Shown here: piece by piece, positions 34,760 to 51,700 of the stretch
Position numbering within the stretch: position 1 is the first letter of the stretch
Layout: every line of letters starts with the position of its first letter
DNA from: Magallana gigas
Taxonomy: Eukaryota
DNA: 64,000 nucleotides
Direction of reading: 5' to 3'
Assembly (NCBI RefSeq): GCF_963853765.1
Contig: NC_088859.1
Coordinates: 43,648,001-43,712,000 of the forward strand
Notes under the pieces: model-generated
Seen by the model: the letters and a program-made list of their open reading frames with translations, nothing else
The model's database searches: none
Told to the model about the DNA's origin: nothing
Translations under genes and position numbers: made by a program

Positions 34760-37445
34760 TCTCACACTTCTGGTAATCAATTCTTTTCTTTGAAATGACT
34801 ACATTGTATTGCTTAAGGTATTATACTTTTAATCAGAATGAAAATGAAAAAATGAATGAAAAAAATTCCACTGATGATAATGACAAACTTTCTATAGTGT
34901 GTTATAGACCTTTTAATGGTAGTGTTATTTTTCACTTTCAAAAAAGTATGTCAATGACCTACTTTTTGAGTTAATGGCCATTGGATATTTTTTGATTTAA
35001 GAAAAATCCCAAAAACTTTTACACCATGATTGAGATTTTATTAATTGTAAAAAATAATACAACTTGCTAAGCTCTTATAAAAATGAAATACAATTTCTGA
35101 ATGGCAGTGACGATACAAAGCATTAAGTTTTCATTCACAATTTATATATATATATATATATAAGTCCGAATTTCCTCTGTCAGTTTTCAAATCCTTACCT
35201 ATTTTTTATTCCATTTAACAAAATTTTTAACAATATTTTTGTAGTGTGTGCCATATGATTATCTAAATGTAAAAAGAGATAAAACAAACCGAACGTATGC
35301 AAAATTATGTTGACCAACACATAAAAATTTTAACATTCAATATTACAGTACTACCAAAAATATTCCAGTGAAAAACGAAATCTGAAAAATGTAGTCCGAA
35401 TTTCTTCTGTTTTGCTAAAATTCCACTTTGTTCAAGCCTAATTCCATCATATAGTAGAAATATCGAATGTTATATCAATAATAATTCATTTCATTAATAC
35501 TTTTTGTGTTTATAACACATTTTACTCATGACATTGAACTTAATAACAATCCAAATCTGAGAACTCAAACCCTGAGTAAACAACTTCCTTAAGTTTATGT
35601 ATAATTCAACATTTATTTTCAAAAATGATTTTATGAAAAGAAAGGTTGGGGGGGGGGGTTAAAAAAAATAAGAATATGAAATATATTTAGTTATGTTTGT
35701 AAAGGACATATATAAAGATAAGGGTCATTATTTTAAAAAGTGACAGAATAAAGAAACCCTGGGCACACAACCTCTCACATTTCCTAAGTGCGTTATTTCT
35801 ATTCTACTTGTCTCTACTGTCTTGCGTGTATCTTACGCAATGTTTATGGTATAGAAGATACAAAATAGATCGGTTTTCTAAAGTTGATCGGTAACAATGA
35901 TATTAAAGGTAGGATCATCAAACACAATCCACAAAACTTGATATATCTTTCAGAAACTTGAAAACGAGACGGCTGGAATTTTGGCATATAACTTAAAACC
36001 TAACACAACCTCTAAATTGGCCTAACATCAGTTTTGGTATGTACCTAAATTCTGACTTGTCTATTTTATTTGTTGATTAAAGTTCTCTTTTTTAAGAAAA
36101 CAAAAAAATAAACAAAAAAAAAACCTTGTTGAGACAAACTTTAAGACGATGCCCAATTAATGGTCAGGCCAAATTTATGCCAATTCTATGCCATGGATGT
36201 AAGGCGAAGTTAGGTTTTTGTGAATATCGTCGTAGCGCTCTGGTCCGGGGATCCTTGGGATGAAGGATATCAATTACCCTTTAAAGTGCTTTCTGAAATC
36301 TAGGAAATCTGGCATAAATTTGTTGGTTTTGGCATCAAATTTCAGTCTTGATCCTTTAGCTTTTAAAGGTTAGTGTACATTCTTTATGAAAATAATCAAA
36401 ATTTATTGATCTGATTGCAGAGCATGCATGGTAAGCGTAAAACAATTGTTTGATTTGGGCTACATAGTTAATAAAAAAAATAATAATGGAGAATTGTCTC
36501 TTCAACTAACTCTATTTCTCAATTCTTTATTCACTGAAAACTAGATCACAGGTAGATTAGAAGCATGGATCAAGTACATACAAACACAATGATAAAAATG
36601 CAAGTACAATATTAATGTATTAACTTGAAAATGTGAATTGTTCAGGAAGAACAGAGGTCTTTAAAATTTATCGATCTTAATGTATCTTATTCTGTTTTAA
36701 GGTTATAGCGCACATGATCATTATTTTCTTATTTAGTAATTACATGTATGTATTTTCTAATCATCGCATAAATACTATTATTTCATAACTGCACAACTGT
36801 TATAAAAATATCGGCGGCATATTTCAATTGGGTAGATATTTTTTTTAATGAAATAGTCAAATAAAATGCGTCAAATTTATAATTTTGCTGGATGGTTGCA
36901 AGTTCAAAATTAACAATATGACATCTTTTAATTTTGTCGTTACATCCACCCAGTAAAGTCCAAGTTTAAAATATGACACATAGTTAAAGGGAATTAAATC
37001 TATCTACAGATTTCAATGAAATACTTTTCAAGAAATTCTTGATACAGCCACATTAAGGAGTGAGAGGCCCAAGAAAATCCGTCAATAAACTCATAAACAA
37101 TATAAACAACTATACCAAAATTAATTAATTTCTTGCCATTCCAAGGCATGTGTAATTAATGATGTAATTCAAAAGATCCTTGTAATTTGATCTAAACAGA
37201 AACGCAATTAAGTTAAAGACAAAGCTTTGAGTTTTCAACCTGTAAAGCTCTGTTTTTTTACGATGATCAACGATATCAGGGCGACTCTGTATGGTTGATC
37301 TTCATACATCAAAAGTAAACCTAATACTGTGAAATATAAAGTTACTTAATCTGTTGAAGCAGCTTATGTAAAATGATCTAATATTGATTGAAGTGAAATG
37401 ACCCTGGAATCAAGAAAGTATCTCTTTCGCATTATTAGAATGTCT

Positions 37446-38733
37446 TCAGAAATAAGCACCGATGGAATCTCTCTGCTCGTTGCTCGAGTCTGACTTGGTT
37501 TCATCGTGATTTAGGCCAGAATTCTCTTTTTCTGGGGTAATATTACCCCTCTCGACTCCCCCGTTTAACCTTAAAGAAAGAGCAGAATTGTCTAGCTGAT
37601 CTCCCTGACCCGATTCCACTGAAGTAAATATATCAGTTATCTCGTGATCAGCGTTCACTGGGGCGCGATCCTCCGAATCAGTCTCCTTTGACTCCGTCTT
37701 AAACTCGTCCACCTCAAACCCGCCGCTGTTCCTCGGGACGTCGTAGATGGAAGATTCACAGATGGATGATGCAGACAAGACTTCTCTTGCCAAAGTGGTA
37801 CCCTCTTCATCGCTACTGATCGCTAGCGTGTAACTCTGTCTTCGCGGTGCGCCGCGAAGGCTTCCCGCACCAGATACGGAACTTGTAGATGATGCAGGGC
37901 TATTCTGAATTAAAGAAGGGCTATCGTCATTTTTCGTTAGAAATTGTAAGCTATATCTAGAAACAAATGTTTTCTTTATGGCCTCCATGTCTTCTATGGT
38001 AGATTCATTTTCATTTACTGTGTTTTTGAGGTTCCGATCAGGATAGGACAAATTTATATAATCATTTATACTTTTTACAGAACTCGGTGTGACCTCGTTA
38101 AGTACGTGCGAAGATCTCGACATTTGCCTAGTTTCTGACAGTTGCGTGTTCAGCTCTGTTTCTATTGCTTTATTACCGGGGTGTATTGTGTCTAACCGAG
38201 TTTCGCTGTATGAGAAGTCACGACGCGGGCTACCGGAAGTTAATACTAAGCCAGGACTTCTAGGATTAGATAACTCATCAAGATCAGTAACTTGCTCATC
38301 AAGAAAATCTAAATCAACTATTTTCTCGGATTCATGGGAAGAGTGTTCTTTTGACAAAGCTAAAAGGGTCAGAGCTGTCAGTTTAGAAATCCTGATAGAG
38401 TCTCCTTCCTCTAGTTTGCGAAGCTTTTCGTTGCCATGGTTATGTATCGATTTTTGTTTATTTTCTGCATTCTCTGGTTTATTGCTCTCGGCGTTGACAA
38501 TGTCTTCTTCAAAAGCCTCATTGTGAGCTCCAGGAATAACACTAATACCCGTGGACGTCCCATTTCTGTGTTTCAACCCTACAAATAAAAATGTATCAAC
38601 AAACCAACAAAGGATAAGGCCTAATCATTTAATTCAATTAGTGGGACTGTATTTAAGGATGAAACCAAAGTAACTACTCACAATCATTTGTTCTCCAAGG
38701 TATTTGGTTGGAGCGCATCACATTTCCGCCCCT
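37446..38733 (-). CDS. Candidate long cytoplasmic tail exons (38733-38682 and 38578-37446), Ser/Glu-rich, ending DSIGAYF*
   Basis: A 376-codon open exon with acceptor TTTTATTTGTAG. A 52-nt exon upstream (acceptor ...AAAACAG, donor GTGAGT) joins it in phase 1. Confidence 0.7.
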
Positions 38734-41700
38734 CTGTTTTTATAAAAATAAAAAAGAAACATCTTATTGTGTATAAATGTCATGGCATGCCCACTTGATC
38801 ACGTTTATCCTTTAACACAAAGACATGTACTCTTCTCTGATACATATGTTCATGCTTCAGATGTTTCATAGATGTTAAGGAAGGGCCGGTCATTATCCAA
38901 GTCTAAGTCTCAATTATCATATCGAATAACCTGAACCAATATTTTATCATGACAAGGCGATTCACAATTTAAAATGCGATTTAATAATCAGAACTCGAAA
39001 AGGTGTATCAGAATTTGTTTATATTTCTTCAAATAACAGTATAGAATAAAGACATGAACCAAATGAATACCCTGAAATGTTTTTTTTAAATCAACACATA
39101 AAAAGTTTTCATTGAAAATTTTGAGTCGTCTCTGCCTTTTGTAGCAACAACTGGGAGAGGCCAACAGAGGCGTGCAACAATATGTGGTGTAGGGAAATAT
39201 TTTTTTTTTTTAGTTCTTGCAAGAGCTCGCTCTGTTAAACTGGTCTCGAGTGTGTTTCATTACTGGAGTAGCCCAAGCACAAAAATTGTTTGCACACAAG
39301 GTTGACTTTTCGCCTCACCGTTTTTTACCTTAATTAAAATTTGTATAAATATAGTTTCATTTTCGAAATGCGTGTACGTATACTGATCATATTATTGAGA
39401 GGGAAAATTCATCCAATTTTTATCTTCAAATGACGAAAACGCCAAATCATTGTTAATTACTGGTAAATTTGTCTCTTGTTCCAGTGAATTCATGCCTATC
39501 TTTTAAGATTAACTGATATCTGAAGAACATGCAACACAGAATAAAAAAATCACAAATTAGTAGTGCACTTACCAGAAACGTGCTGAGCTCACGTGCAATG
39601 CATTCACATTCGTGCATAAAACGAGATAAAAGTCAAAAGTAGGATTTTATTCTTCAATTATAAAATTTAAATATTCAACACAAAACAACAATAAACAATC
39701 AATAATGACATCGTAGAATAAACAGTTCATAAAAATACATAAATATACGAATGATGACCGTAGGTGATAGCTCAATTTGGGCGGTACAACTTCAGCAACT
39801 TGATTGAAACTCCTAAAGAATTGAACAACTTTTTACGTGACTTCTGTGAACTATGAATAGAACATTATGTTTTTAAAAAAAGAACACAAAGAACAAAAAA
39901 AAGTGACGTGAAGTAAATGTTCATAGTCATGCAATGCGTAATTCATATCTGAGAGACGTGCAGTGATTGTCGTGCTGATAGCCGATTGTGTACAGGGAAA
40001 TCCAAAGTTAGGTTTTCTTTATAGTTCTGATTGTTCTTTTCACTCTGCCCTGCCGTGGGTAAAGAGCTATCTAGAAACAGAAAAAGACTTGTCTGATCGC
40101 TCAAGATCTAAATGATAGCGACAATGAATGCAAGCTGAGATTGGTTAATTTCTTCCGTTTTCTTAACGGCCTCCGTCCTGTATCAGCTTTTGTTAGAAAT
40201 AACAGCCCACTATCTGAAATTCATTGCTATTCCGAGTCTGCGCTGGGTCTGGATGTCCAAGGTTTATCTTAGCTACTCGAATAAGGGAGGGTTCGTCTGT
40301 ATCACTGCAATGAAAAGCACGTCCTGTCCCAGAAGACATTTGTAAGGGCCTGGGGGTTATATTATAGGCCAAACAAAAAAATTACTAGTAGCTAGAACTA
40401 GTATTGACCCAGACCGGCAATTGAGTGATTTTTTTTCTTGATTTTCAACGATTTACGAACTTTTTGTTGTGGATCATAGCCATACATGACGACATTGTAG
40501 TTAAATCTTACTGACCTTTGGCGTTGAAATGGACTATTGTTCTTTGGAAAATTGACGACACTTTGGAATTGAGCATGCGTGAAACAGTCGGTGATAGAGG
40601 GCATAGAAGGCATGCTTAGTTGATTTTGAGGCTGAGATTTGTGAGGATCATTTTCATCTTTACGAACCTTTCGCTTCTTGTGAAGACAATAAGCTAAGAC
40701 AGATATCAGTATCAACAGCACAAGAAATCCAACGACGCCCCCGATAATGTAGGGCGTAGTACTGGTCTCGGACGGCGACGAAACTCGTTTTTTGTTGACT
40801 GCCCCTACAACGTAATTGAAGAAGTGTTCGTCAAATCTCAAAAGATCGATTTACAACGTGTGTTTTCAGACAAATAATACAAGTGCAACCCTTAGGACAC
40901 GAAACGCACCGTGTAGTCCTGTGAAATCTAAAATAATCTGTGTCAAATTACCATTTTCCTGGTTTAAAAAGTTTTTTCTCAAAGTACATAATTAAACTTG
41001 ATACAAATTTACACTACTCGTATGCGATAATTGGGTTTCCCTGCGTTTCGTACATGTAGATTAGCAGGAAAAGGTATAATTGGGAGGTATTCGATTGGTA
41101 TGCCTGTCTTAAATGGGCGTGGCCATAGGAACCGATGAGAATAAAAGATTAAATTGGGGTTTTAAAATCATTCTAAGGCAGCGCTCTATAGAGTACACAT
41201 TTTAAAAAATCTAATAATAATGAATATGTATTTATATAAGTATTTATAAACACATGTATTCACTTGATGTCGTGCTTTTTCATGGTCAAATACTGCATTT
41301 AATGAACGTCCGGCGCTCCTTAGTTAAATACACAGCATCGGGCACAGATTTCCAGTTTGTCGTATATGGTTTTTTTTATAGCCGGTTTTAAACGTCGTCA
41401 ATGATAGGTACACTTTTATATAACAGTTGGCTGTTGTATGCGTTTAGTTGCATTGCCAATCAACCCCAGCATCGCTTACGGCATATACCGGTATGTGTTG
41501 TATTTATTGAAGACAAAATAGTGTATACTATACTGAATGTAGAACTAATCAAATTAGAAATAGACCCTATCATAAGTATATACATGTAAGATGCGCGTGT
41601 CATATCACTACTAGTGTATCATCCTACGAACTACATGTATACAGTGTACACGTTCGACACACAAGAGAATAAGTACCATATACCCAGACCCCATACTACT

Positions 41701-42744
41701 TAGACCAGACCCCATACTACTTGACAAATGATCGGTGTATTCAGAAATTACAATTTGGTCTCATGACATTCCTCAGTTTGTCTGTAAAATAATGAGAAGA
41801 TATCGTCCCAAAGGTTTTAGAAATGACAGTTAATGACGTAACCTGTGTCGGGGACACATGAAACTCGAAGATTATATCCGTGAGACGTGTCTTACAGCCA
41901 ATGAATGTATCACGGTTAATCTTCGAAGAACATTGACATTATTAAAGTTCCCAAAATTCTATTCAGTTTGGTGGATCGAGGTCGCTTTAAGTTACCAGGT
42001 ACCAAGCACGTATTTATTATAGATCTATCAGATCTGTCAGACACTAATTTTTGGGGATAAATACAAAAATCCTGGGGTACAGGGCCGGAGACAATATTAA
42101 TGTTGTGACGCTAAACCTTTGAATGTTATAGCAGTACATATGTATAATTAAATTACGAAAATTAATGTTTACCTAAAATTAAGAGAAGCACCCCTCTCAG
42201 ATTTAGAATACTATAGAATACTATTTTTGACAATCGTGGCTTATTTGATGAAATTATAACAAAAGTTCAGTGATTGCAATTTTATATATTATATAAAACG
42301 GCGGAATAGCGGAAATAAATACATGCGTAATATTAATTCAAATGAGAGAAATGGATATTAAAAAATTTAAAAATTAAAACAAAATTTTAACACTGTTATC
42401 AGAAATGGGTGACTTATCGGTTACTTACCTGCTGCTGATGTAATAACTTTCAATGGTCTACCGCAACTGATAGTGCGCGCAAAAGCACTGGATCCAGAAC
42501 ACATTCTGAACGTGTAGTTGAAGCCGGGTGTTAACCCAGAGACTGTGAATAACGGCGAGGACCGGTTAGAGATGGTGTTGAAGCTCTGTCTCTCCGTGGA
42601 GATGTCCAGCATCTGTAACAGGAAGTGCTGCGGAGAGCCGCCATTGAACCCCGGATTACACTCTACCTGCACGGATGTGTCGCTCACTGCTTTGGTGGAA
42701 CAATTGAAAGGAATTTCGGGTGGACCTACAATGAAACTCGATCA

Positions 42745-42780
<36 letters not shown>

Positions 42781-45700
42781 GGGGGAGAGAGAGAGAGAGA
42801 GAGACTCATAAAGATCAGGGGCGATCTAGATTTTTTGCCACCTGATGGCTAATTTTGAGGATATGACATGTAAACTTACTGGGTTCGACAATACGATACA
42901 TGCATGGAAACATCATATCACCAACAATATTCGTAGCAATGCAAACAATGTCCGAATATTGGTTGTTCGATCTACAGAAATAAAATGAATATGAAATATT
43001 TTTTTGTGATTTCCAACAAATAAAACTGCTAGCCAAAGCTATATATGAACACAAAATGAACTCACGCAACATCTATGCGGATGGTAGTTGAGGACACGGC
43101 CTGGGATTCCACGTCTCCTAAAAGCCCAGTTTTTATTGGCGCATTACTTTGAATATACCGCCATCGCATGGTAACGTTGTTTGGACTGGCTGTAACTCGA
43201 CACGTGAGTGCAACGTCATCACCAATGCGAACGGCATGTTTCTGAACACCAGAGAACGAGCAGATGGGACTATCTGGAGAGAGAGAAAAGTTTATTTGAA
43301 TGTTCCTCAGTTAATTAGCAGGGGCCAGACTCATCCAAAAAATCTTGATAAGCAATAAAAAAAAAAAGAAGGGAAAAGTCAATTTCCCAAAATCTTCAAA
43401 ATCGTAGGGGGTACGCGGGTCGCTGGCATAGTATATATTTATAACTTCGATTTTTCTCACTTTCCATATATTTATAACTTCGATTTCTCTCACTTTCCAT
43501 TCCAATTTTTTACATACTCCCAAAAAGTGGGGAAGGGGGGGGGGGGGAACTCCATGATAATTCAATTTTTACTATGTAAATTTCAGAAATTTTTTGCTGT
43601 GAGAAAAAGTGTGTGGGGGGGGGGGGGCAGGCCGATACTACGTGCCTGATAAGTGCAGTTTAATGGTAAAGAGTGTAAAACTTACATAGAGCCTGAACAT
43701 TCAAAGGAGGACTTTTAGCTGCTCCCAGATGATTGTAACCCTGGCAACTATACTGCCCACTTTGGTCACTGTAAACAAAATACACATGTAAATGTCTGTC
43801 AAAACACAACGTTCAAAACTTTCAGAATAATAAGTAAAAAAGTGCAAACCGATGAAAATGCTGCACATGCAGACTTGTAGAAAGTCTAGACACAGATTTG
43901 TCCACACGTGTGATGTTGAAGCTGGAGTCCGATATAGGAGATCCATTGAAGAACCACAGAGTTTGGCTTGGATTTGGTAATGGACGCGCCTCTATATCAC
44001 AATGAAGAACCAGGAGTGACCCCTCTGTAACAGTTTTAGTTCCATTATCTGCCGATATTGAGGGGGAGTCTGGGAAGAAAATGAAGGTTCGCTTTAACAA
44101 GGAAATTGTCTTCCAAAATTTCTAAATAGGATATTGAGGGGGAGTCTGGGAAGAAAATGAAGGTTTGCTTTAACAAAGAAATTGTTTTGCAAAATTTCTA
44201 AATAGGATATTATGTGATAAACGTTGAAGCGTTGAAAGGCCTAATATTCTATAATATTACTAGCATAGGGGATAATATTAATTTAAATCACGGTAGATGA
44301 AAAGTGGTTTCGGTCGTCAGAGGGAATATTTAATGACTTACAATTAGGTAGAAGGACAACTGAGCGGTTGAGACTATGTATAAACGTCTTCTGTAAAACT
44401 GGGTTTGTAACTACACAGGAGAGAGCCTGGTTCTCCATGTTTCTGGTAAGGTGTCGAATCAACGTTCCTCTGACCAAGTAAGTATCGTCCGAGTTTCTGA
44501 TTACTTGTACAGAGGTGCTGTTAACTCGTACGCCATTCAGCATCCAGAAGATTTTTGCTGCAGGTCTACTTCCGTTACTATGACACGTGATGGATCGTAA
44601 CTCCCCATCATCAAACAATCCGGTGAAGCTATCAAAGACCGGAGCCAGGGGAGCAACTGTAACAGAGGAAAACAAAGAAAGAAGAAACCATAAGCCTGAA
44701 ACGTCAGAACAACTTCTTTTGGTTTTCGGGCTGTCTTTTAATTACGATCACTTACGGTTAACGTTCAGAACCACTGTTTGTTGAACTTGGTAGAAATACT
44801 GTATGCTGGCGTCACATATCACAGACCCCTTATACATCGTCCTGTCGAGCGTCAACCTAAGGGTGTTCACCCGAGAAATGGTGCCGTTGGCGTGAACCGT
44901 GTCCACGTCGTGTCCGACGTAAGTGGTTCCGTTCGTGTTCGGACCTACAGTATACTAATTACAGTCAGTACAGCAAGAACACGGGATCCAGTGATACTAG
45001 TTTTATGATCGATCTGCCGTTTGGCTTACCCAGTAGATGCCACTGTACTAGGGGTGGAGGTTTTCCGCCGTCCGCTGTACATGTTAGGGTCTGTACAGAT
45101 CCCTCATCTATAACAGTGTCTGGTCCGTTCACAGTAAACAGGGTGGGTNNNNNNNNNNNNNNNNNNNNNNNNNNNNNNNNNNNNNNNNNNNNNNNNNNNN
45201 NNNNNNNNNNNNNNNNNNNNNNNNNNNNNNNNNNNNNNNNNNNNNNNNNNNNNNNNNNNNNNNNNNNNNNNNNNNNNNNNNNNNNNNNNNNNNNNNNNNN
45301 NNNNNNNNNNNNNNNNNNNNNNNNNNNNNNNNNNNNNNNNNNNNNNNNNNNNNNNNNNNNNNNNNNNNNNNNNNNNNNNNNNNNNNNNNNNNNNNNNNNN
45401 NNNNNNNNNNNNNNNNNNNNNNNNNNNNNNNNNNNNNNNNNNNNNNNNNNNNNNNNNNNNNNNNNNNNNNAACTGTAAATAACCTTTTTTCCAAATCGGA
45501 GCCATATTCTTACATTCATATATGGATAAAGGTATATAAAGGTATATCTTTAAAGATTAATTCTTTTGCGACGCAGAAAACATTGATTTTCTTCGCGGTA
45601 TAGCTAGATAATTTTGCAAATAGAGAAAAAGACACACATTTATTGTTTTGACACTGTTGCTATAATAACAGCGGAAAAACAAAGGAAAATTCAGAGCTAA

Positions 45701-48700: not shown

Positions 48701-51700
48701 GTGAATTCTTCACTAAAATCGAGTTTAAAAACAATAACAAGTCGACACAAATATTGTATTGTTCATCAAATCATCAGTTTTTGACGCAAATGCTCATCTC
48801 TTATCGATTGTTTTTTCCTGATAACAGGTATTTGGAGTAGCTCTATCCGGGGAGGTAATTCTACACCTCACGGAACGGCTTGATTAGCCGCACTCAATAT
48901 CTGGTTCAACCATTGTATTCACTAGTAAAAATGATAATCATATTAATTAATTCAAAGATATTTAAACAGATTTTTTTTAAATGAAATTCAAATTCTGAAC
49001 TTCCATATAATGCCAATGGGACACAATATCCTATTCGGTGAAAGACTTTGCAAATTTCAGGACGGGTCGCTGGCGACTTTTGTTATATTTGAATACAAGG
49101 AACTACTAGTATTGAATTACCTATATAAGTGTTGCATAACGTTACCATTCTATGGTTTGAGTAATAATAAATTGAAATCCTTGAATTCTTTTTTTAGTAT
49201 GGCGCCATCATATTTACTTTTTTCTGTCATTAATTCAGCAAGTTTTAACCGAAATTGGGCAGTTCCAGACGCTACGCTTTTACATGTAACCAAATCTGTT
49301 AACTCTCTTGCACTTTTAAACGACACTGATATCATTTAAGTTAACAGTTTTTAAAAGTTGCTTTTGTTGTTCAAATCAATAGCAAATATTCCTTGTTCTT
49401 TGAGGGAAAGATGTAAAGAACTTATGTGGTACAATAACATTGCACTCTGAGTTGAAAAAGTCGCCAAAGAAACACCGCTACTGCTAATTAGTGAAAAGGG
49501 TTTCCTTTGAAAAAAGATTTGATATCTCGTTAATGACAACGGGGGTATAGATGCGCAGGTGCAGAGCATTTTCATCTAGGAAACTCTGTAACGATCGATA
49601 CGGTTTACCGTGTAATTAGGGAACACTAGTCGATAATTGGCAATCTTAGTCAAAATAAATCTTTAAAGACGCATAAAATCAATGCACCTCGCAATAGATG
49701 CTAAGACATTAAACCTGCCTTCGATATTGAGGTTTGGTCATTAATGATCAAAATAGGGATAATGATGGTGACAAACACCACACGTGACCTCATGATCTAA
49801 AGATAAGGACATCAAATCAATGGATTACCACAATCTCGTAAAACCCAACTTCGGAAAAGTTGACAATGTATATTGAATTCGTGTTTTTTGAAATTCCAAA
49901 AAGTGATAAAGACTTGTTATAAAAGCTAGCTACGTGCTGACAATGACAATGACAATTTCTTTATTCTCTGAACTGCATAAATTACAGTGTTGAGAAAAAT
50001 CTCAAAAAATTGGACGGCGAATATTAAATTACCAAAGCCTAGGCCCCAGGTGGATCATGAAGCAATCTTAGACTTGCGTCAGAAATTGTACACTGTATTA
50101 ATGTTTCTTGTTTAAAACCACTGTCAAAATTGAAATGCTATCAAAAGTATCTTGATATAACATGTACATATCATTCCTTCAGTAGAAGAATCACTCTTAC
50201 AAGTATCAACATATCTATCATTCAAAGCAAACATAAAAAAATCACGGCTATTATATAGGCTAAAACTGTTATCTTTTTTTGGTGCTAGAATCATTATAAA
50301 ATCATAACTGATTTGAGGAATCTTTTTCTCGTATTTTACAGCTTTAAAGGAATTATGTAGAAAATGAAACAATTTTTTGACATTCTGTAAGCAATTATGA
50401 GAAAAATAATCATGTAATCTATATTTTGATTTGACATCACTTTAAAAAGGAGCTCAAAGCTTGTTTAATGCCTTTTTTATTTTAGAGAATGCAGGCGTTT
50501 TAGATATATACATCATTGGTAAAAACAAAGAACAAAATTTGGGGATTTGTTACTTATTTCCTTCATATCTTACGGAAAATGTCAGTTTAAAACATGATTT
50601 TTAAGCCTTGGTACACCCAATCAAACTAAACTATTGTTATGAAGCAGAATTTAAGAATTTACGTCCTGAATTTCGTAAACCTGTAGACACCTTCCATTAA
50701 CTAGATCTTGACCTGTTAAACCCTGGAGCCAGGGCAGACTAGTCTCTAGTCGTTGTACAATCTAGTTAGATGATAAATCGTCCTGTCGGAGTTCTTCGGT
50801 AACTCCAGTACGCTGTATACCGATGTTGTTATACTTGTGCTCTAAGAACCATAACCAGGGATATCTTACCACCCGTATGTGCACTGATTATCAAATTGTT
50901 CCTAACATACATATCAAATTTTATGACAATTGATATACCCAAAACCATCGTTAATTTATATTTTAAAAAACAAACAAACAAAAAAAAACCCCACCGCATA
51001 ATGCACATGCGTTTGAGTTTGCGTTGCGAGAGTGTTCTTGAACCAATTCATTTAGCAATACAATTTTCGTTGTGGTTAGGTACAATAAAACACTTTCAAG
51101 AAAGCATTGGCTGAGTGAACATGCAACGTAAGTTTGTATGGAACGCCTCAGTTGCCTTATGTAGGTAATCTTCATAATATGATGATACTTCAACATTACA
51201 TGCTGATACTTTAACATTACGTGATGGTACTTTAACATTACATGATGGTACTTCAACATTACGTGCTGATACTTCAACATTACATGATGGTACTTTAACA
51301 TTACATGCTGATACTTCAACATTACGTGATGGTACTTTAACATTACGTGATGGTACTTTAACATTACGTGCTGATACTTTAACATTACATGCTGATACTT
51401 TAACATTATATGATGGTACTTTAACATTACATGCTGATACTTCAACATTACATGCTGATACTTCATTATATGATGGTACTTCACTATGCGGTGGTTCTAA
51501 AAATAGGGAAGTTTTAACATTGGGCTGTTTCTCTGTTTCAGAGATTGATCACATAGGACTGAGGTCCACTGAGACTAGTTTGGATCATGTAAATCAAAGT
51601 ACTGAAGTACTGTCGGGAGTGGATTTTATTGATTATTATCAATTTTAAAATCAACGATATGTTATAAAACATTTTATAATATGAATTCTCGAACTTTTCC

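What the first reader, a model, noticed from the sequence alone, without database searches (positions are those of the whole stretch)
37446..40804. One receptor, two alternative cytoplasmic tails that both end in G-x-Y-F
Seen: after the TM exon there is a 112-nt terminal exon ending ...QIVGCYF* and, further downstream, a 1133-nt terminal exon ending ...DSIGAYF*. The tails otherwise look unrelated. Only the long tail carries YDVP and YIN tyrosine motifs. Known: hydrophobic C-termini bind PDZ domains, and YDxV/P and YxN motifs are Nck/Crk- and Grb2-type SH2 sites, as in nephrin signalling. Inference: alternative last-exon choice may switch SH2 signalling on or off while keeping the same C-terminal scaffold anchor. 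I do not recall this being described for a molluscan Side/nephrin-like protein.
Basis: partly seen in the sequence, partly recalled or inferred. Interest (0 to 1): 0.7.

Follow-up and report, generated by a model that had tools for sequence, protein, structure and literature searches.

The report
Oyster adhesion receptor with alternative tails
This is the 3' end of a Pacific oyster immunoglobulin-type adhesion receptor gene that makes a short or a long cytoplasmic tail, both ending in Tyr-Phe; both forms are already in public protein databases, but the shared ending, conserved as far as pearl oysters, has not been described.

Summary
The window is Magallana (Crassostrea) gigas and the gene is LOC105340249, on the minus strand. 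It encodes a single-copy receptor with five Ig domains, one FN3 domain and one transmembrane (TM) segment.

**Confirmed**
- Both match public models: the 757-aa UniProt A0A8W8LVR5 and the 1061-aa XP_034314644.1.
- Both are under coding selection in seven oysters and are present in Pinctada.

**Corrected**
- The long tail is not reached from donor 40516 through a micro-exon.
- It is in frame only from an internal donor just after HKKRK (exon end 40668), through a 52-nt exon (38733-38682).
- A spliced cDNA contig from a congener joins 40516 directly to 38733. That shifts the frame and stops after five codons.
- The short form therefore also carries a highly conserved 50-aa extension that the long form lacks.
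- Read-through past 40516 is coding too, which gives a third tail without Tyr-Phe.

**Motifs**
- The deeply conserved unit is Tyr-Phe at the C-terminus, not G-x-Y-F.
- IYDxP is invariant. YIN is lost in two oysters.

**Function (inferred)**
- A PDZ-type anchor, as in nectin-2 alpha/delta, is most likely.
- A COPII ER-export signal is the main rival.

No read-level evidence was obtained, because the single read-laying run was lost.

The parts
53745..54095 (-). First coding exon: signal peptide plus Ig1 (V-type). Further Ig exons map at about 45147-45019, 44954-44343, 44097-43678, 43271-43065 and 42970-42848.
   Evidence: Local tblastn of P0063 and P0064; Pfam Ig_3, V-set and C2-set_2. The N gap at 45129-45478 was left untouched.
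42427..42723 (-). FN3 exon, spliced to the TM exon (exon end about 42428).
   Evidence: Pfam fn3; tblastn; cDNA contig L012 joins 42428 to 40804.
40668..40804 (-). Common part of the TM exon: stalk, TM helix and stop-transfer HKKRK. It ends at the proximal 5' splice site (AAG|GTTCGT, GT at 40667-40666, phase 0).
   Evidence: P0063 and four other RefSeq long models continue HKKRK|RGGN. The donor position is conserved in seven oysters and in Pinctada (CAG|GTTTGT).
40517..40667 (-). 50-codon extension, coding only when the distal donor is used (VRKDEND..SMPSMPSITDCFTHAQFQSVVNFPK..SPFQRQ). It ends at the distal 5' splice site (AAG|GTCAGT, GT at 40515-40514, phase 2).
   Evidence: Present in P0064. 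Indels are multiples of three, and 66-94% of positions match the four distant species per 30-nt window. pS is 0.31-0.37 against 0.56-0.78 in the TM core. Conserved in Pinctada.
40398..40516 (-). Read-through ORF past the distal donor (RSVRFNYNVVMYGYDPQQKVRKSLKIKKK..), a third, intron-retaining tail. Its end is variable and lacks YF.
   Evidence: Open in all seven oysters and in Pinctada. By eye, the differences from Pinctada are mostly at third codon positions. Many unspliced database ORFs carry it.
40193..40304 (-). Short terminal exon (acceptor CATTGCAG|T). With donor 40516 it reads S DTDEPSLIRVAKINLGH..EFQIVGCYF, then stop at 40195-40193. GCYF is at 40207-40196.
   Evidence: 100% match to P0064 aa 721-757. 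Frame +1 is the only frame open in seven species, with pN/pS 0.34 against 0.90 and 1.82 in the other two frames. The Pinctada counterpart ends HLGYF.
40008..40070 (-). Conserved block behind a conserved polypyrimidine tract and TAG acceptor. It is a candidate further alternative terminal exon, or a 3'UTR element of the short form.
   Evidence: 65-77% of positions match the four distant species, against 21-34% in the stretch just upstream. Frame 0 (from donor 40668) is open for 15-22 codons in all species. Frame +2 is also largely open. Unresolved.
39646..39651 (-). AATAAA, the likely poly(A) signal of the short-tail mRNA.
   Evidence: position only, no 3'-end data.
39573..39587 (-). It has AG and GT flanks but no support.
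   Evidence: Skipped in cDNA contig L012. Absent from all public protein models. No match in the four more distant oysters.
38682..38733 (-). 52-nt exon (RGGNVMRSNQIPWRTND plus one base), used only on the way to the long tail.
   Evidence: P0063. By eye, changes across seven species are at third codon positions of frame 0. The junction 38682>38578 is seen in cDNA contigs L011, L012 and L013.
37446..38578 (-). Long terminal exon, 376 codons plus stop. Conserved blocks are TDLDELSNPRSPG, DYINLSY (YIN 38060-38052), KKTFVSRYSL, GAPRRQSYTLAISSDEEG, IYDVPRNSGGF (YDVP 37745-37734) and the terminal GAYF (37460-37449).
   Evidence: Uninterrupted ORFs of 369-403 codons in four other oysters, with pN/pS 0.39-0.49. 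The 3'UTR reaches about 36660 in congener cDNA contig L011.

Best explanation
**Shown**
- The interval is the tail-switch region of M. gigas LOC105340249. This is a single-copy gene for a type I cell-surface protein with five Ig domains and one FN3 domain.
- The TM exon holds two competing 5' splice sites.
- The proximal site (exon end 40668, right after HKKRK, phase 0) leads through a 52-nt exon into the 1133-nt terminal exon. The product is a 1061-aa protein with a tail of about 390 aa.
- The distal site (exon end 40516, phase 2) keeps a highly conserved 50-aa juxtamembrane block and leads into the 112-nt terminal exon. The product is a 757-aa protein.
- Leaving the distal site unspliced gives a third coding tail.
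- Joining the distal site to the 52-nt exon, which is seen in a congener cDNA contig, is unproductive.

**Inferred**
- The Tyr-Phe-COOH kept at the end of both spliced tails since the oyster/pearl-oyster ancestor is a docking signal that depends on the free C-terminus.
- Most likely it is a PDZ ligand of the nectin/afadin x-Y-hydrophobic type (about 0.45). It would keep both forms on the same cortical scaffold.
- Only the long tail adds a phospho-regulated adaptor platform: the invariant IYDxP (Crk/Nck-type), RRQSY, and in most species DYINL.
For: **Isoform structure**
- Public proteins for both isoforms map exactly to the window.
- Long models with the same HKKRK|RGGN junction exist in C. virginica, S. 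echinata, S. cucullata and O. edulis.
- The 52-nt exon is read in frame 0 in all long models, and by eye its differences fall at third codon positions of that frame. Donor 40668 supplies that phase; donor 40516 does not.
- The short exon has only one open frame in seven species, with pN/pS 0.34, and that frame needs the phase-2 donor 40516.
- cDNA contig L012 puts the FN3, TM, 52-nt and long exons on one transcript.

**Depth of conservation**
- Pinctada keeps both donors, a short exon ending LGYF and a long ORF ending VVYF.
- 8 of 8 short tails and 9 of 10 long tails end in YF.
- The locus is single copy in this genome.

**Functional reading**
- Precedent: nectin-2 alpha and delta are splice variants with different tails that both end in A-x-Y-V. 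The afadin PDZ domain binds that motif and needs it (PMC2185068).
- The coding read-through tail lacks YF. That fits an isoform-specific anchor better than a signal every isoform needs.
Against: - No read-level evidence was obtained for the two productive junctions in M. gigas (40668>38733 and 40516>40304). The single read-laying run was lost to a filter, so both junctions rest on annotation and conservation.
- The only spliced upstream junction I saw directly is the out-of-frame 40516>38733, and it comes from another species.
- For a PDZ ligand, position -2 is unusually free: A, C, G, V or M.
- One Crassostrea has GAHF.
- No PDZ partner, kinase or SH2 interaction was tested.
- YIN is not conserved in C. 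virginica or S. cucullata.
Confidence: 0.6

Rival explanations
1. The terminal Tyr-Phe is a PhiC-type ER-export signal. The last two hydrophobic residues plus the free carboxylate bind the B site of COPII Sec24. Both spliced tails keep it because each needs it to reach the cell surface, not to bind a scaffold.
For: - The constraint falls on the last two residues, while positions -2 and -3 vary.
[quoted passage not shown] The Phe-Phe end of ERGIC-53 was seen bound to Sec24a (PMC5464768).
- Two read-through tails end in valine.
Against: - The conserved read-through tail ends variously (..GQY, ..YPA, ..VQM, ..MKT), so not every isoform keeps such a signal.
- The GAHF variant breaks the hydrophobic pair.
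- The best-studied PhiC cargo has very short tails, not tails of about 390 aa (my own knowledge).
- The two roles are not mutually exclusive.
Confidence: 0.25
2. One reading: both isoforms use the whole TM exon up to 40516 or 40512, and a 10-15-nt micro-exon (39582/39587-39573) restores the frame into 38733 and the long tail.
For: - The micro-exon has AG and GTAAGT flanks, and the arithmetic restores the frame.
- The junction 40516>38733 does exist in a congener cDNA contig.
Against: - That cDNA contig has no micro-exon, and its ORF stops after ..QRQRGAGM.
- All five long RefSeq models lack both the extension and the micro-exon.
- The micro-exon region has no match outside close congeners.
Confidence: 0.04
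3. The long exon is mainly expressed from its own promoter in the intron upstream of the 52-nt exon. The product would be a soluble cytoplasmic protein rather than a receptor tail.
For: - Two congener RNA-type contigs from different runs (L011, L013) begin in that intron and are spliced only at 38682>38578.
- An ATG lies in the 52-nt exon in the gigas clade.
Against: - L012 links the TM exon to the long exon.
- The first codons of the 52-nt exon (R-G-G-N), upstream of that ATG, are conserved as coding.
- The ATG is absent in C. virginica, Saccostrea and Ostrea.
- Contig ends in a graph assembly are not transcription starts.
Confidence: 0.08
4. The spliced short tail is an annotation artefact. 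The true short form is the read-through tail, and the exon ending in GCYF is untranslated 3'UTR.
For: - The read-through ORF is coding and common in database ORFs.
- I saw no spliced contig with the junction 40516>40304.
- In C. virginica, model X2 uses the exon with an immediate stop.
Against: - The exon has one frame open in seven oysters, with pN/pS 0.34 and 3-nt indels. That is the frame set by donor 40516.
- Pinctada has the same arrangement, ending LGYF.
- By eye, the bases around the distal donor do not vary at any codon position in the species compared.
Confidence: 0.05

Closest known systems
Nectin-2 (PVRL2) alpha and delta splice variants
   Same: One IgSF adhesion receptor has alternative 3' exons that give different cytoplasmic tails. 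Both tails end in the same x-Tyr-hydrophobic C-terminus (AVYV and AMYV). Position -2 is free and Tyr at -1 is fixed. The motif binds the afadin PDZ domain (PMC2185068).
   Different: Nectins have three Ig domains and no FN3, and their variants also differ in the TM segment. The terminal residue here is Phe, not Val. No afadin binding was tested, and no sequence orthology was shown.
Drosophila Sidestep family (for example Side-IV)
   Same: The architecture is five Ig domains, one FN3 domain, a TM segment and a cytoplasmic domain. [quoted passage not shown]
   Different: No specific sequence relationship to Side was found; the PDB hits are generic IgSF proteins. Beat-type ligands were not examined. 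I know of no report of alternative tails with a shared ending in Side.
Nephrin / SYG-2
   Same: RefSeq names the orthologs nephrin-like and syg-2-like. The protein has CD80-like C2-set Ig domains. The tail carries a YDxP tyrosine motif that recalls the nephrin YDxV Nck sites (my own knowledge).
   Different: There are five Ig domains, not eight or nine. The SYG-2 match (E 5e-13) is no better than the matches to titin, OBCAM or DSCAM. The tails are not alignable.
CEACAM1-L / CEACAM1-S (my own knowledge, not checked here)
   Same: Alternative splicing gives a long tail with phosphotyrosine docking motifs or a short tail without them, on the same ectodomain.
   Different: The mechanism is inclusion of an internal exon. 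There is no shared C-terminal motif, and the family is unrelated.
PhiC ER-export motif of ERGIC-53 and p24 proteins
   Same: An aromatic or hydrophobic pair sits at the extreme C-terminus and is read together with the free carboxylate (PMC5464768).
   Different: That cargo has tails of about 10-15 residues. Here the tails are 92 and about 390 residues, and one coding isoform lacks the pair.

Membership tests
Sidestep family | Ectodomain of five Ig domains plus one FN3 domain, one TM segment and a cytoplasmic tail | tested here: met
   Pfam on P0063 and P0064 finds V-set, two C2-set_2 stretches, four Ig_3 stretches, I-set and fn3. My count of five Ig domains combines this with the exon map.
Sidestep family | Specific sequence relationship to Side proteins, and Beat binding | tested here: inconclusive
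   The PDB sequence search gives only generic IgSF hits and no Side chain among the 60 shown. Beat binding cannot be tested here.
Nephrin / SYG-2 | Eight to nine Ig domains followed by one FN3 domain | tested here: not met
   Only five Ig domains.
Nectin | V-C2-C2 ectodomain of three Ig domains | tested here: not met
   Five Ig domains plus FN3. The Nectin-3 and Nectin-1 hits cover only Ig1-2 at E 1e-10 to 1e-8.
Nectin-type afadin ligand (E/A-x-Y-V-COOH) | Tyr at -1 and an aliphatic or hydrophobic residue at 0, at the free C-terminus | tested here: inconclusive
   Tyr at -1 is present in 17 of 18 tails and Phe at 0 in 18 of 18. Phe replaces Val, and binding was not tested.
Class II PDZ ligand (hydrophobic-x-hydrophobic-COOH) | Hydrophobic residue at position -2 | tested here: inconclusive
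   Position -2 is A, C, G, V or M, depending on tail and species.
PhiC ER-export signal | A pair of hydrophobic residues, or a single Val, at the extreme C-terminus | tested here: met
   Met at sequence level only. Tyr-Phe is present on both spliced tails, but not on the read-through tail. Function was not tested.
Grb2-type SH2 site (pY-x-N) | A Y-x-N motif conserved in orthologs | tested here: not met
   DYIN is present in M. gigas, two congeners, S. echinata, O. edulis, P0003, P0008 and Pinctada. It is deleted in C. virginica and reads YIK in S. cucullata.
Crk/Nck-type SH2 site (pY-D-x-P) | A Y-D-x-P motif conserved in orthologs | tested here: met
   IYD[V/I/T]P is invariant in all ten long tails, including the pteriids. 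Phosphorylation cannot be tested here.

The most novel reading that the evidence does not exclude
Bivalves of the order Ostreida have kept, for a long evolutionary time, a tail switch with several outputs. It is built on two competing 5' splice sites inside a coding exon. The roughly 250 nt around them serve both as codons and as splicing signals, which shows as a halved synonymous rate. The two spliced outputs are both tagged with Tyr-Phe-COOH for a dedicated reader whose specificity (aromatic at -1, Phe at 0, position -2 free) is not one of the standard PDZ classes.
Probability: 0.25. Interest if true: 0.55.

Novelty: new member of a known kind. Interest (0 to 1): 0.35.

Why it matters
- It gives a corrected and testable gene model for an uncharacterised, deeply conserved bivalve adhesion receptor.
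- It identifies the conserved short linear motifs in the tails: Tyr-Phe-COOH, IYDxP, RRQSY, TDLDELSNPRSPG and the ITDCFTHAQFQSVV block.
- It shows that the principle known from vertebrate nectin-2, different tails with the same C-terminal tag, also occurs in molluscs.
- It is a clean natural case for separating PDZ anchoring from COPII export as the reason a terminal aromatic pair is kept.
- It is not a new kind of system, and both isoforms are already in public databases as predictions.

Tried and rejected
1. **Reads.** No junction reads were seen. Those places were not sent to any search afterwards and were masked in local scripts.
2. **Sequencing runs.** Fourteen runs that the tool guessed to be RNA (unconfirmed) hold 55-74% of the words of 37300-40900. 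That is compatible with both UTRs being expressed, but it is not evidence.
Rejected.
4. **RNA structure.** RNAalifold paired the proximal donor with the ITDCF codons in an 11-bp helix. There is no covariation, and single-sequence folds have z-scores from -0.03 to +1.1. Not supported.
5. **Paralogs.** None found for either tail in this genome.
6. **Pfam.** The tails give nothing except a sub-threshold FAM163 hit over the TM and juxtamembrane part (23.2 bits against a cut-off of 28.3). I treat it as a TM artefact.
7. **ESM Atlas.** Only generic single-pass tails scored, all below 0.9, for the short tail. Nothing was found for the long tail.
8. **Literature.** No paper mentions LOC105340249.
9. 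**Complex prediction.** I located DIL-domain loci as a route to the oyster afadin PDZ domain.
10. **Spliced contigs.** Cluster listings turned up no spliced contig for 40668>38733 or 40516>40304.
Full report
**What is there**

The finding lies on the minus strand. The exon with the transmembrane (TM) helix starts at 40804. It runs as an open frame of 147 codons to 40398. Upstream exons encode a signal peptide, V-type and C2-type Ig domains and one FN3 domain.

Searching the long ORF against protein representatives, and then listing cluster members, identified the gene. It is Magallana (Crassostrea) gigas LOC105340249. Two public proteins share one ectodomain:
- XP_034314644.1 / UniProt A0A8W8LUP9 (P0063, 1061 aa)
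- UniProt A0A8W8LVR5 (P0064, 757 aa)

Both map back to the window exon by exon. Identity is 100% over the TM exon and the short exon and 98.9% over the long exon. The difference in the long exon is a 3-aa indel allele. Neither tail has a second copy in this genome.

**Checking the observation**

YDVP and YIN occur only in the long exon.

The shared ending is not chance. Of 1112 ORFs of at least 30 aa in the window, three end in YF and two end in G.YF, and those two are these tails.

The long-tail chain is wrong. All five long oyster models read HKKRK|RGGN.. (M. gigas, C. virginica, S. echinata, S. cucullata, O. edulis). They therefore leave the TM exon at an internal donor: AAG|GTTCGT, exon end 40668, phase 0. 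From there the path is:
1. the 52-nt exon 38733-38682, then
2. the long exon starting at 38578.

By eye, the 52-nt exon differs between the seven oysters at third codon positions of frame 0 (AGG/CGT/CGA, TCC/TCA, CCT/CCC). That is the frame the public long models use, and donor 40668 supplies it.

**Transcript evidence**

I have no read-level data. I kept those places out of all later searches.

Indirect evidence came from Logan contigs of two unnamed congeners.
- L012 is a spliced cDNA contig. It joins the FN3 exon (..42428) to 40804-40516, then 38733-38682, then 38578 onwards.
- L012 also shows that distal donor to 52-nt exon is out of frame. Its ORF ends ..QRQRGAGM-stop.
- L011 and L013, from two other runs, have 38682>38578 spliced but start in the intron upstream.

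I did not see either productive junction (40668>38733 or 40516>40304) in a contig. Both rest on the public models and on conservation.

**Conservation**

I fetched the orthologous loci of C. virginica, S. echinata, S. cucullata and O. edulis, and of the two congeners, and aligned them.

| Segment | Result |
|---|---|
| Short exon | Only frame +1, the frame set by the phase-2 donor 40516, is open in all seven. pS 0.61, pN 0.21, ratio 0.34. The other frames give 0.90 and 1.82. Indels are multiples of three. |
| Long exon | Uninterrupted ORF of 369-403 codons in four other oysters, pN/pS 0.39-0.49 |
| 50-codon extension between the donors | Strongly conserved, pS 0.31-0.37 against 0.56-0.78 in the TM core |
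| About 100 nt after the distal donor | Stays open in frame in all species (RSVRFNY.V..YGYDP....RK..K.K.K), pS 0.27-0.29 |

The pearl oyster Pinctada imbricata has the same layout:
- the proximal donor (CAG|GTTTGT)
- the extension and the read-through ORF, which by eye differ from the oyster sequence mostly at third codon positions
- the distal donor (AG|GTCAGTAAG)
- a short exon, in the right phase, ending HLGYF-stop
- a long ORF ending VVYF-stop

So the read-through tail is also protein-coding. By eye, the bases around the distal donor do not vary at any codon position in the species compared. That fits use both as codons and as a splice site.

**What is actually conserved at the ends**

| Tail | Species | Ending |
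|---|---|---|
| Short | four Crassostrea/Magallana | GCYF |
| Short | Saccostrea (2), Ostrea | VGYF |
| Short | Pinctada | LGYF |
| Long | seven oyster sequences (M. gigas, one unnamed congener, C. virginica, two Saccostrea, O. edulis, and P0003 from an unnamed source) | GAYF |
| Long | one Crassostrea, in many contigs | GAHF |
| Long | a pteriid-like ENA contig | VMYF |
| Long | Pinctada | VVYF |

The conserved unit is Tyr-Phe-COOH: Phe in 18 of 18 tails and Tyr in 17 of 18. G-x-Y-F is not the unit.

The read-through tail has no such ending. It ends ..GQY..SSY(K)..YPA..VQM..VPV..IQV or ..MKT.

In the long tail, several blocks are conserved out to the pteriids:
- IYD[V/I/T]P
- RRQSY
- TDLDE(L/F)S.PRSP
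- (K/R).F(V/I)S.Y(S/T)(L/I)

DYIN is deleted in C. virginica and reads YIK in S. cucullata.

**Other outputs**

C. virginica isoform X2 (666 aa) ends at HKKRK. That is what proximal donor to short exon gives, because the exon then starts with TGA. The same holds in the window.

A further conserved block sits at 40070-40008, behind a conserved pyrimidine tract and TAG acceptor. It could be another terminal exon; from donor 40668 it would add about 20 basic residues. It could instead be a 3'UTR element. Two frames stay open and I could not decide between them.

**How it most likely works**

Shown:
- Two competing 5' splice sites in the TM exon are coupled to different terminal exons.
- There are at least three coding tails.
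- Two unrelated tails keep Tyr-Phe-COOH.

Inferred: the ending is a docking signal that depends on the free C-terminus.

I favour a PDZ ligand of the nectin/afadin kind (about 0.45).
- Nectin-2 alpha and delta are splice variants with different tails. Both end in A-x-Y-V, with a free -2 position and a fixed Tyr. The afadin PDZ domain binds that motif and needs it (PMC2185068).
- The coding read-through tail lacks YF, which fits an isoform-specific anchor.

The main rival (about 0.25) is the PhiC ER-export signal. That is a terminal hydrophobic pair read with the carboxylate by the Sec24 B site (PMC5464768). It matches a constraint limited to the last two residues.

The SH2 reading of IYDxP is reasonable. 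YDxP is the Crk/Nck-type motif of p130Cas, from my own knowledge. It is untested.

**Family**

The ectodomain is a generic five-Ig plus FN3 adhesion type. PDB matches to SYG-2, nectins, DSCAM, titin and IgLONs are all of similar weak strength. The architecture matches Sidestep. It does not match nephrin (too few Ig domains) or nectin (too many, plus an FN3 domain). I do not file it under any of these families.

**Novelty**

- Both isoforms are already present as database predictions.
- No paper mentions the gene.
- The principle is known from nectin-2.
- New here are the corrected exon chain, the third coding tail, the depth of conservation and the Tyr-Phe tag.
- Interest is modest.

Noticed in passing
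window 40008-40070 (-): A conserved block begins exactly at a conserved pyrimidine tract and TAG acceptor, about 120 nt after the short-tail stop. It is present in all seven oysters. It could be a further alternative terminal exon (about 20 basic residues from donor 40668) or a 3'UTR element.
   Followed up: partly
window 40429-40436 (-): An A8 run in the read-through ORF. Other M. gigas contigs and the congeners have A7, which changes the tail end from ..KKKNHSIAGLGQY to ..KKKITQLPVWVSTGSSY(K). This is either a polymorphism or a homopolymer error (P0090 against P0039, P0095 and P0097).
   Followed up: partly
window 40410-40690 (-): Synonymous divergence is about half that of the neighbouring TM-core codons (pS 0.27-0.37 against 0.56-0.78). 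By eye, the bases around the distal donor do not vary at any codon position out to Pinctada. This suggests overlapping coding and splicing constraints. An RNA-structure explanation was tested and not supported.
   Followed up: yes
window 38226-38234 (-): A 9-nt (Gly-Ser-Pro) indel allele. The window and most contigs read LVLTSGSPRRDF, while XP_034314644.1 reads LVLTSRRDF. Another database variant (P0045) has further in-frame deletions.
   Followed up: no
L011:1-170 and L013:1-130 (equivalent to window about 38889-38734): Two RNA-type contigs from different runs of a congener start in the intron upstream of the 52-nt exon, yet are spliced downstream. This is either retained intron or graph branching. 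An internal start cannot be excluded.
   Followed up: partly
window 50963-51484 (-) and 53379-53612 (+): Long ORFs made of a tandem KYHHVMLKYQHVML-type repeat sit in inverted orientation on the two strands, inside the first large intron of the gene. This is probably a satellite or a transposon-borne tandem repeat.
   Followed up: no
window 45129-45478: A run of N interrupts the second Ig exon region. The public protein covers the missing residues.
   Followed up: no
L014:11474-12691 (Pinctada) and the P0008 contig: An amino-acid transporter gene (Aa_trans) lies tail-to-tail just downstream of the long exon in both pteriid sequences. Synteny with the oyster window was not checked.
   Followed up: no
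proteins P0005 and P0007 (database): Copies of the long tail show systematic T>I, S>F/L and P>L changes. They look like ORFs called on bisulfite-converted reads and are not biological variants.
   Followed up: no
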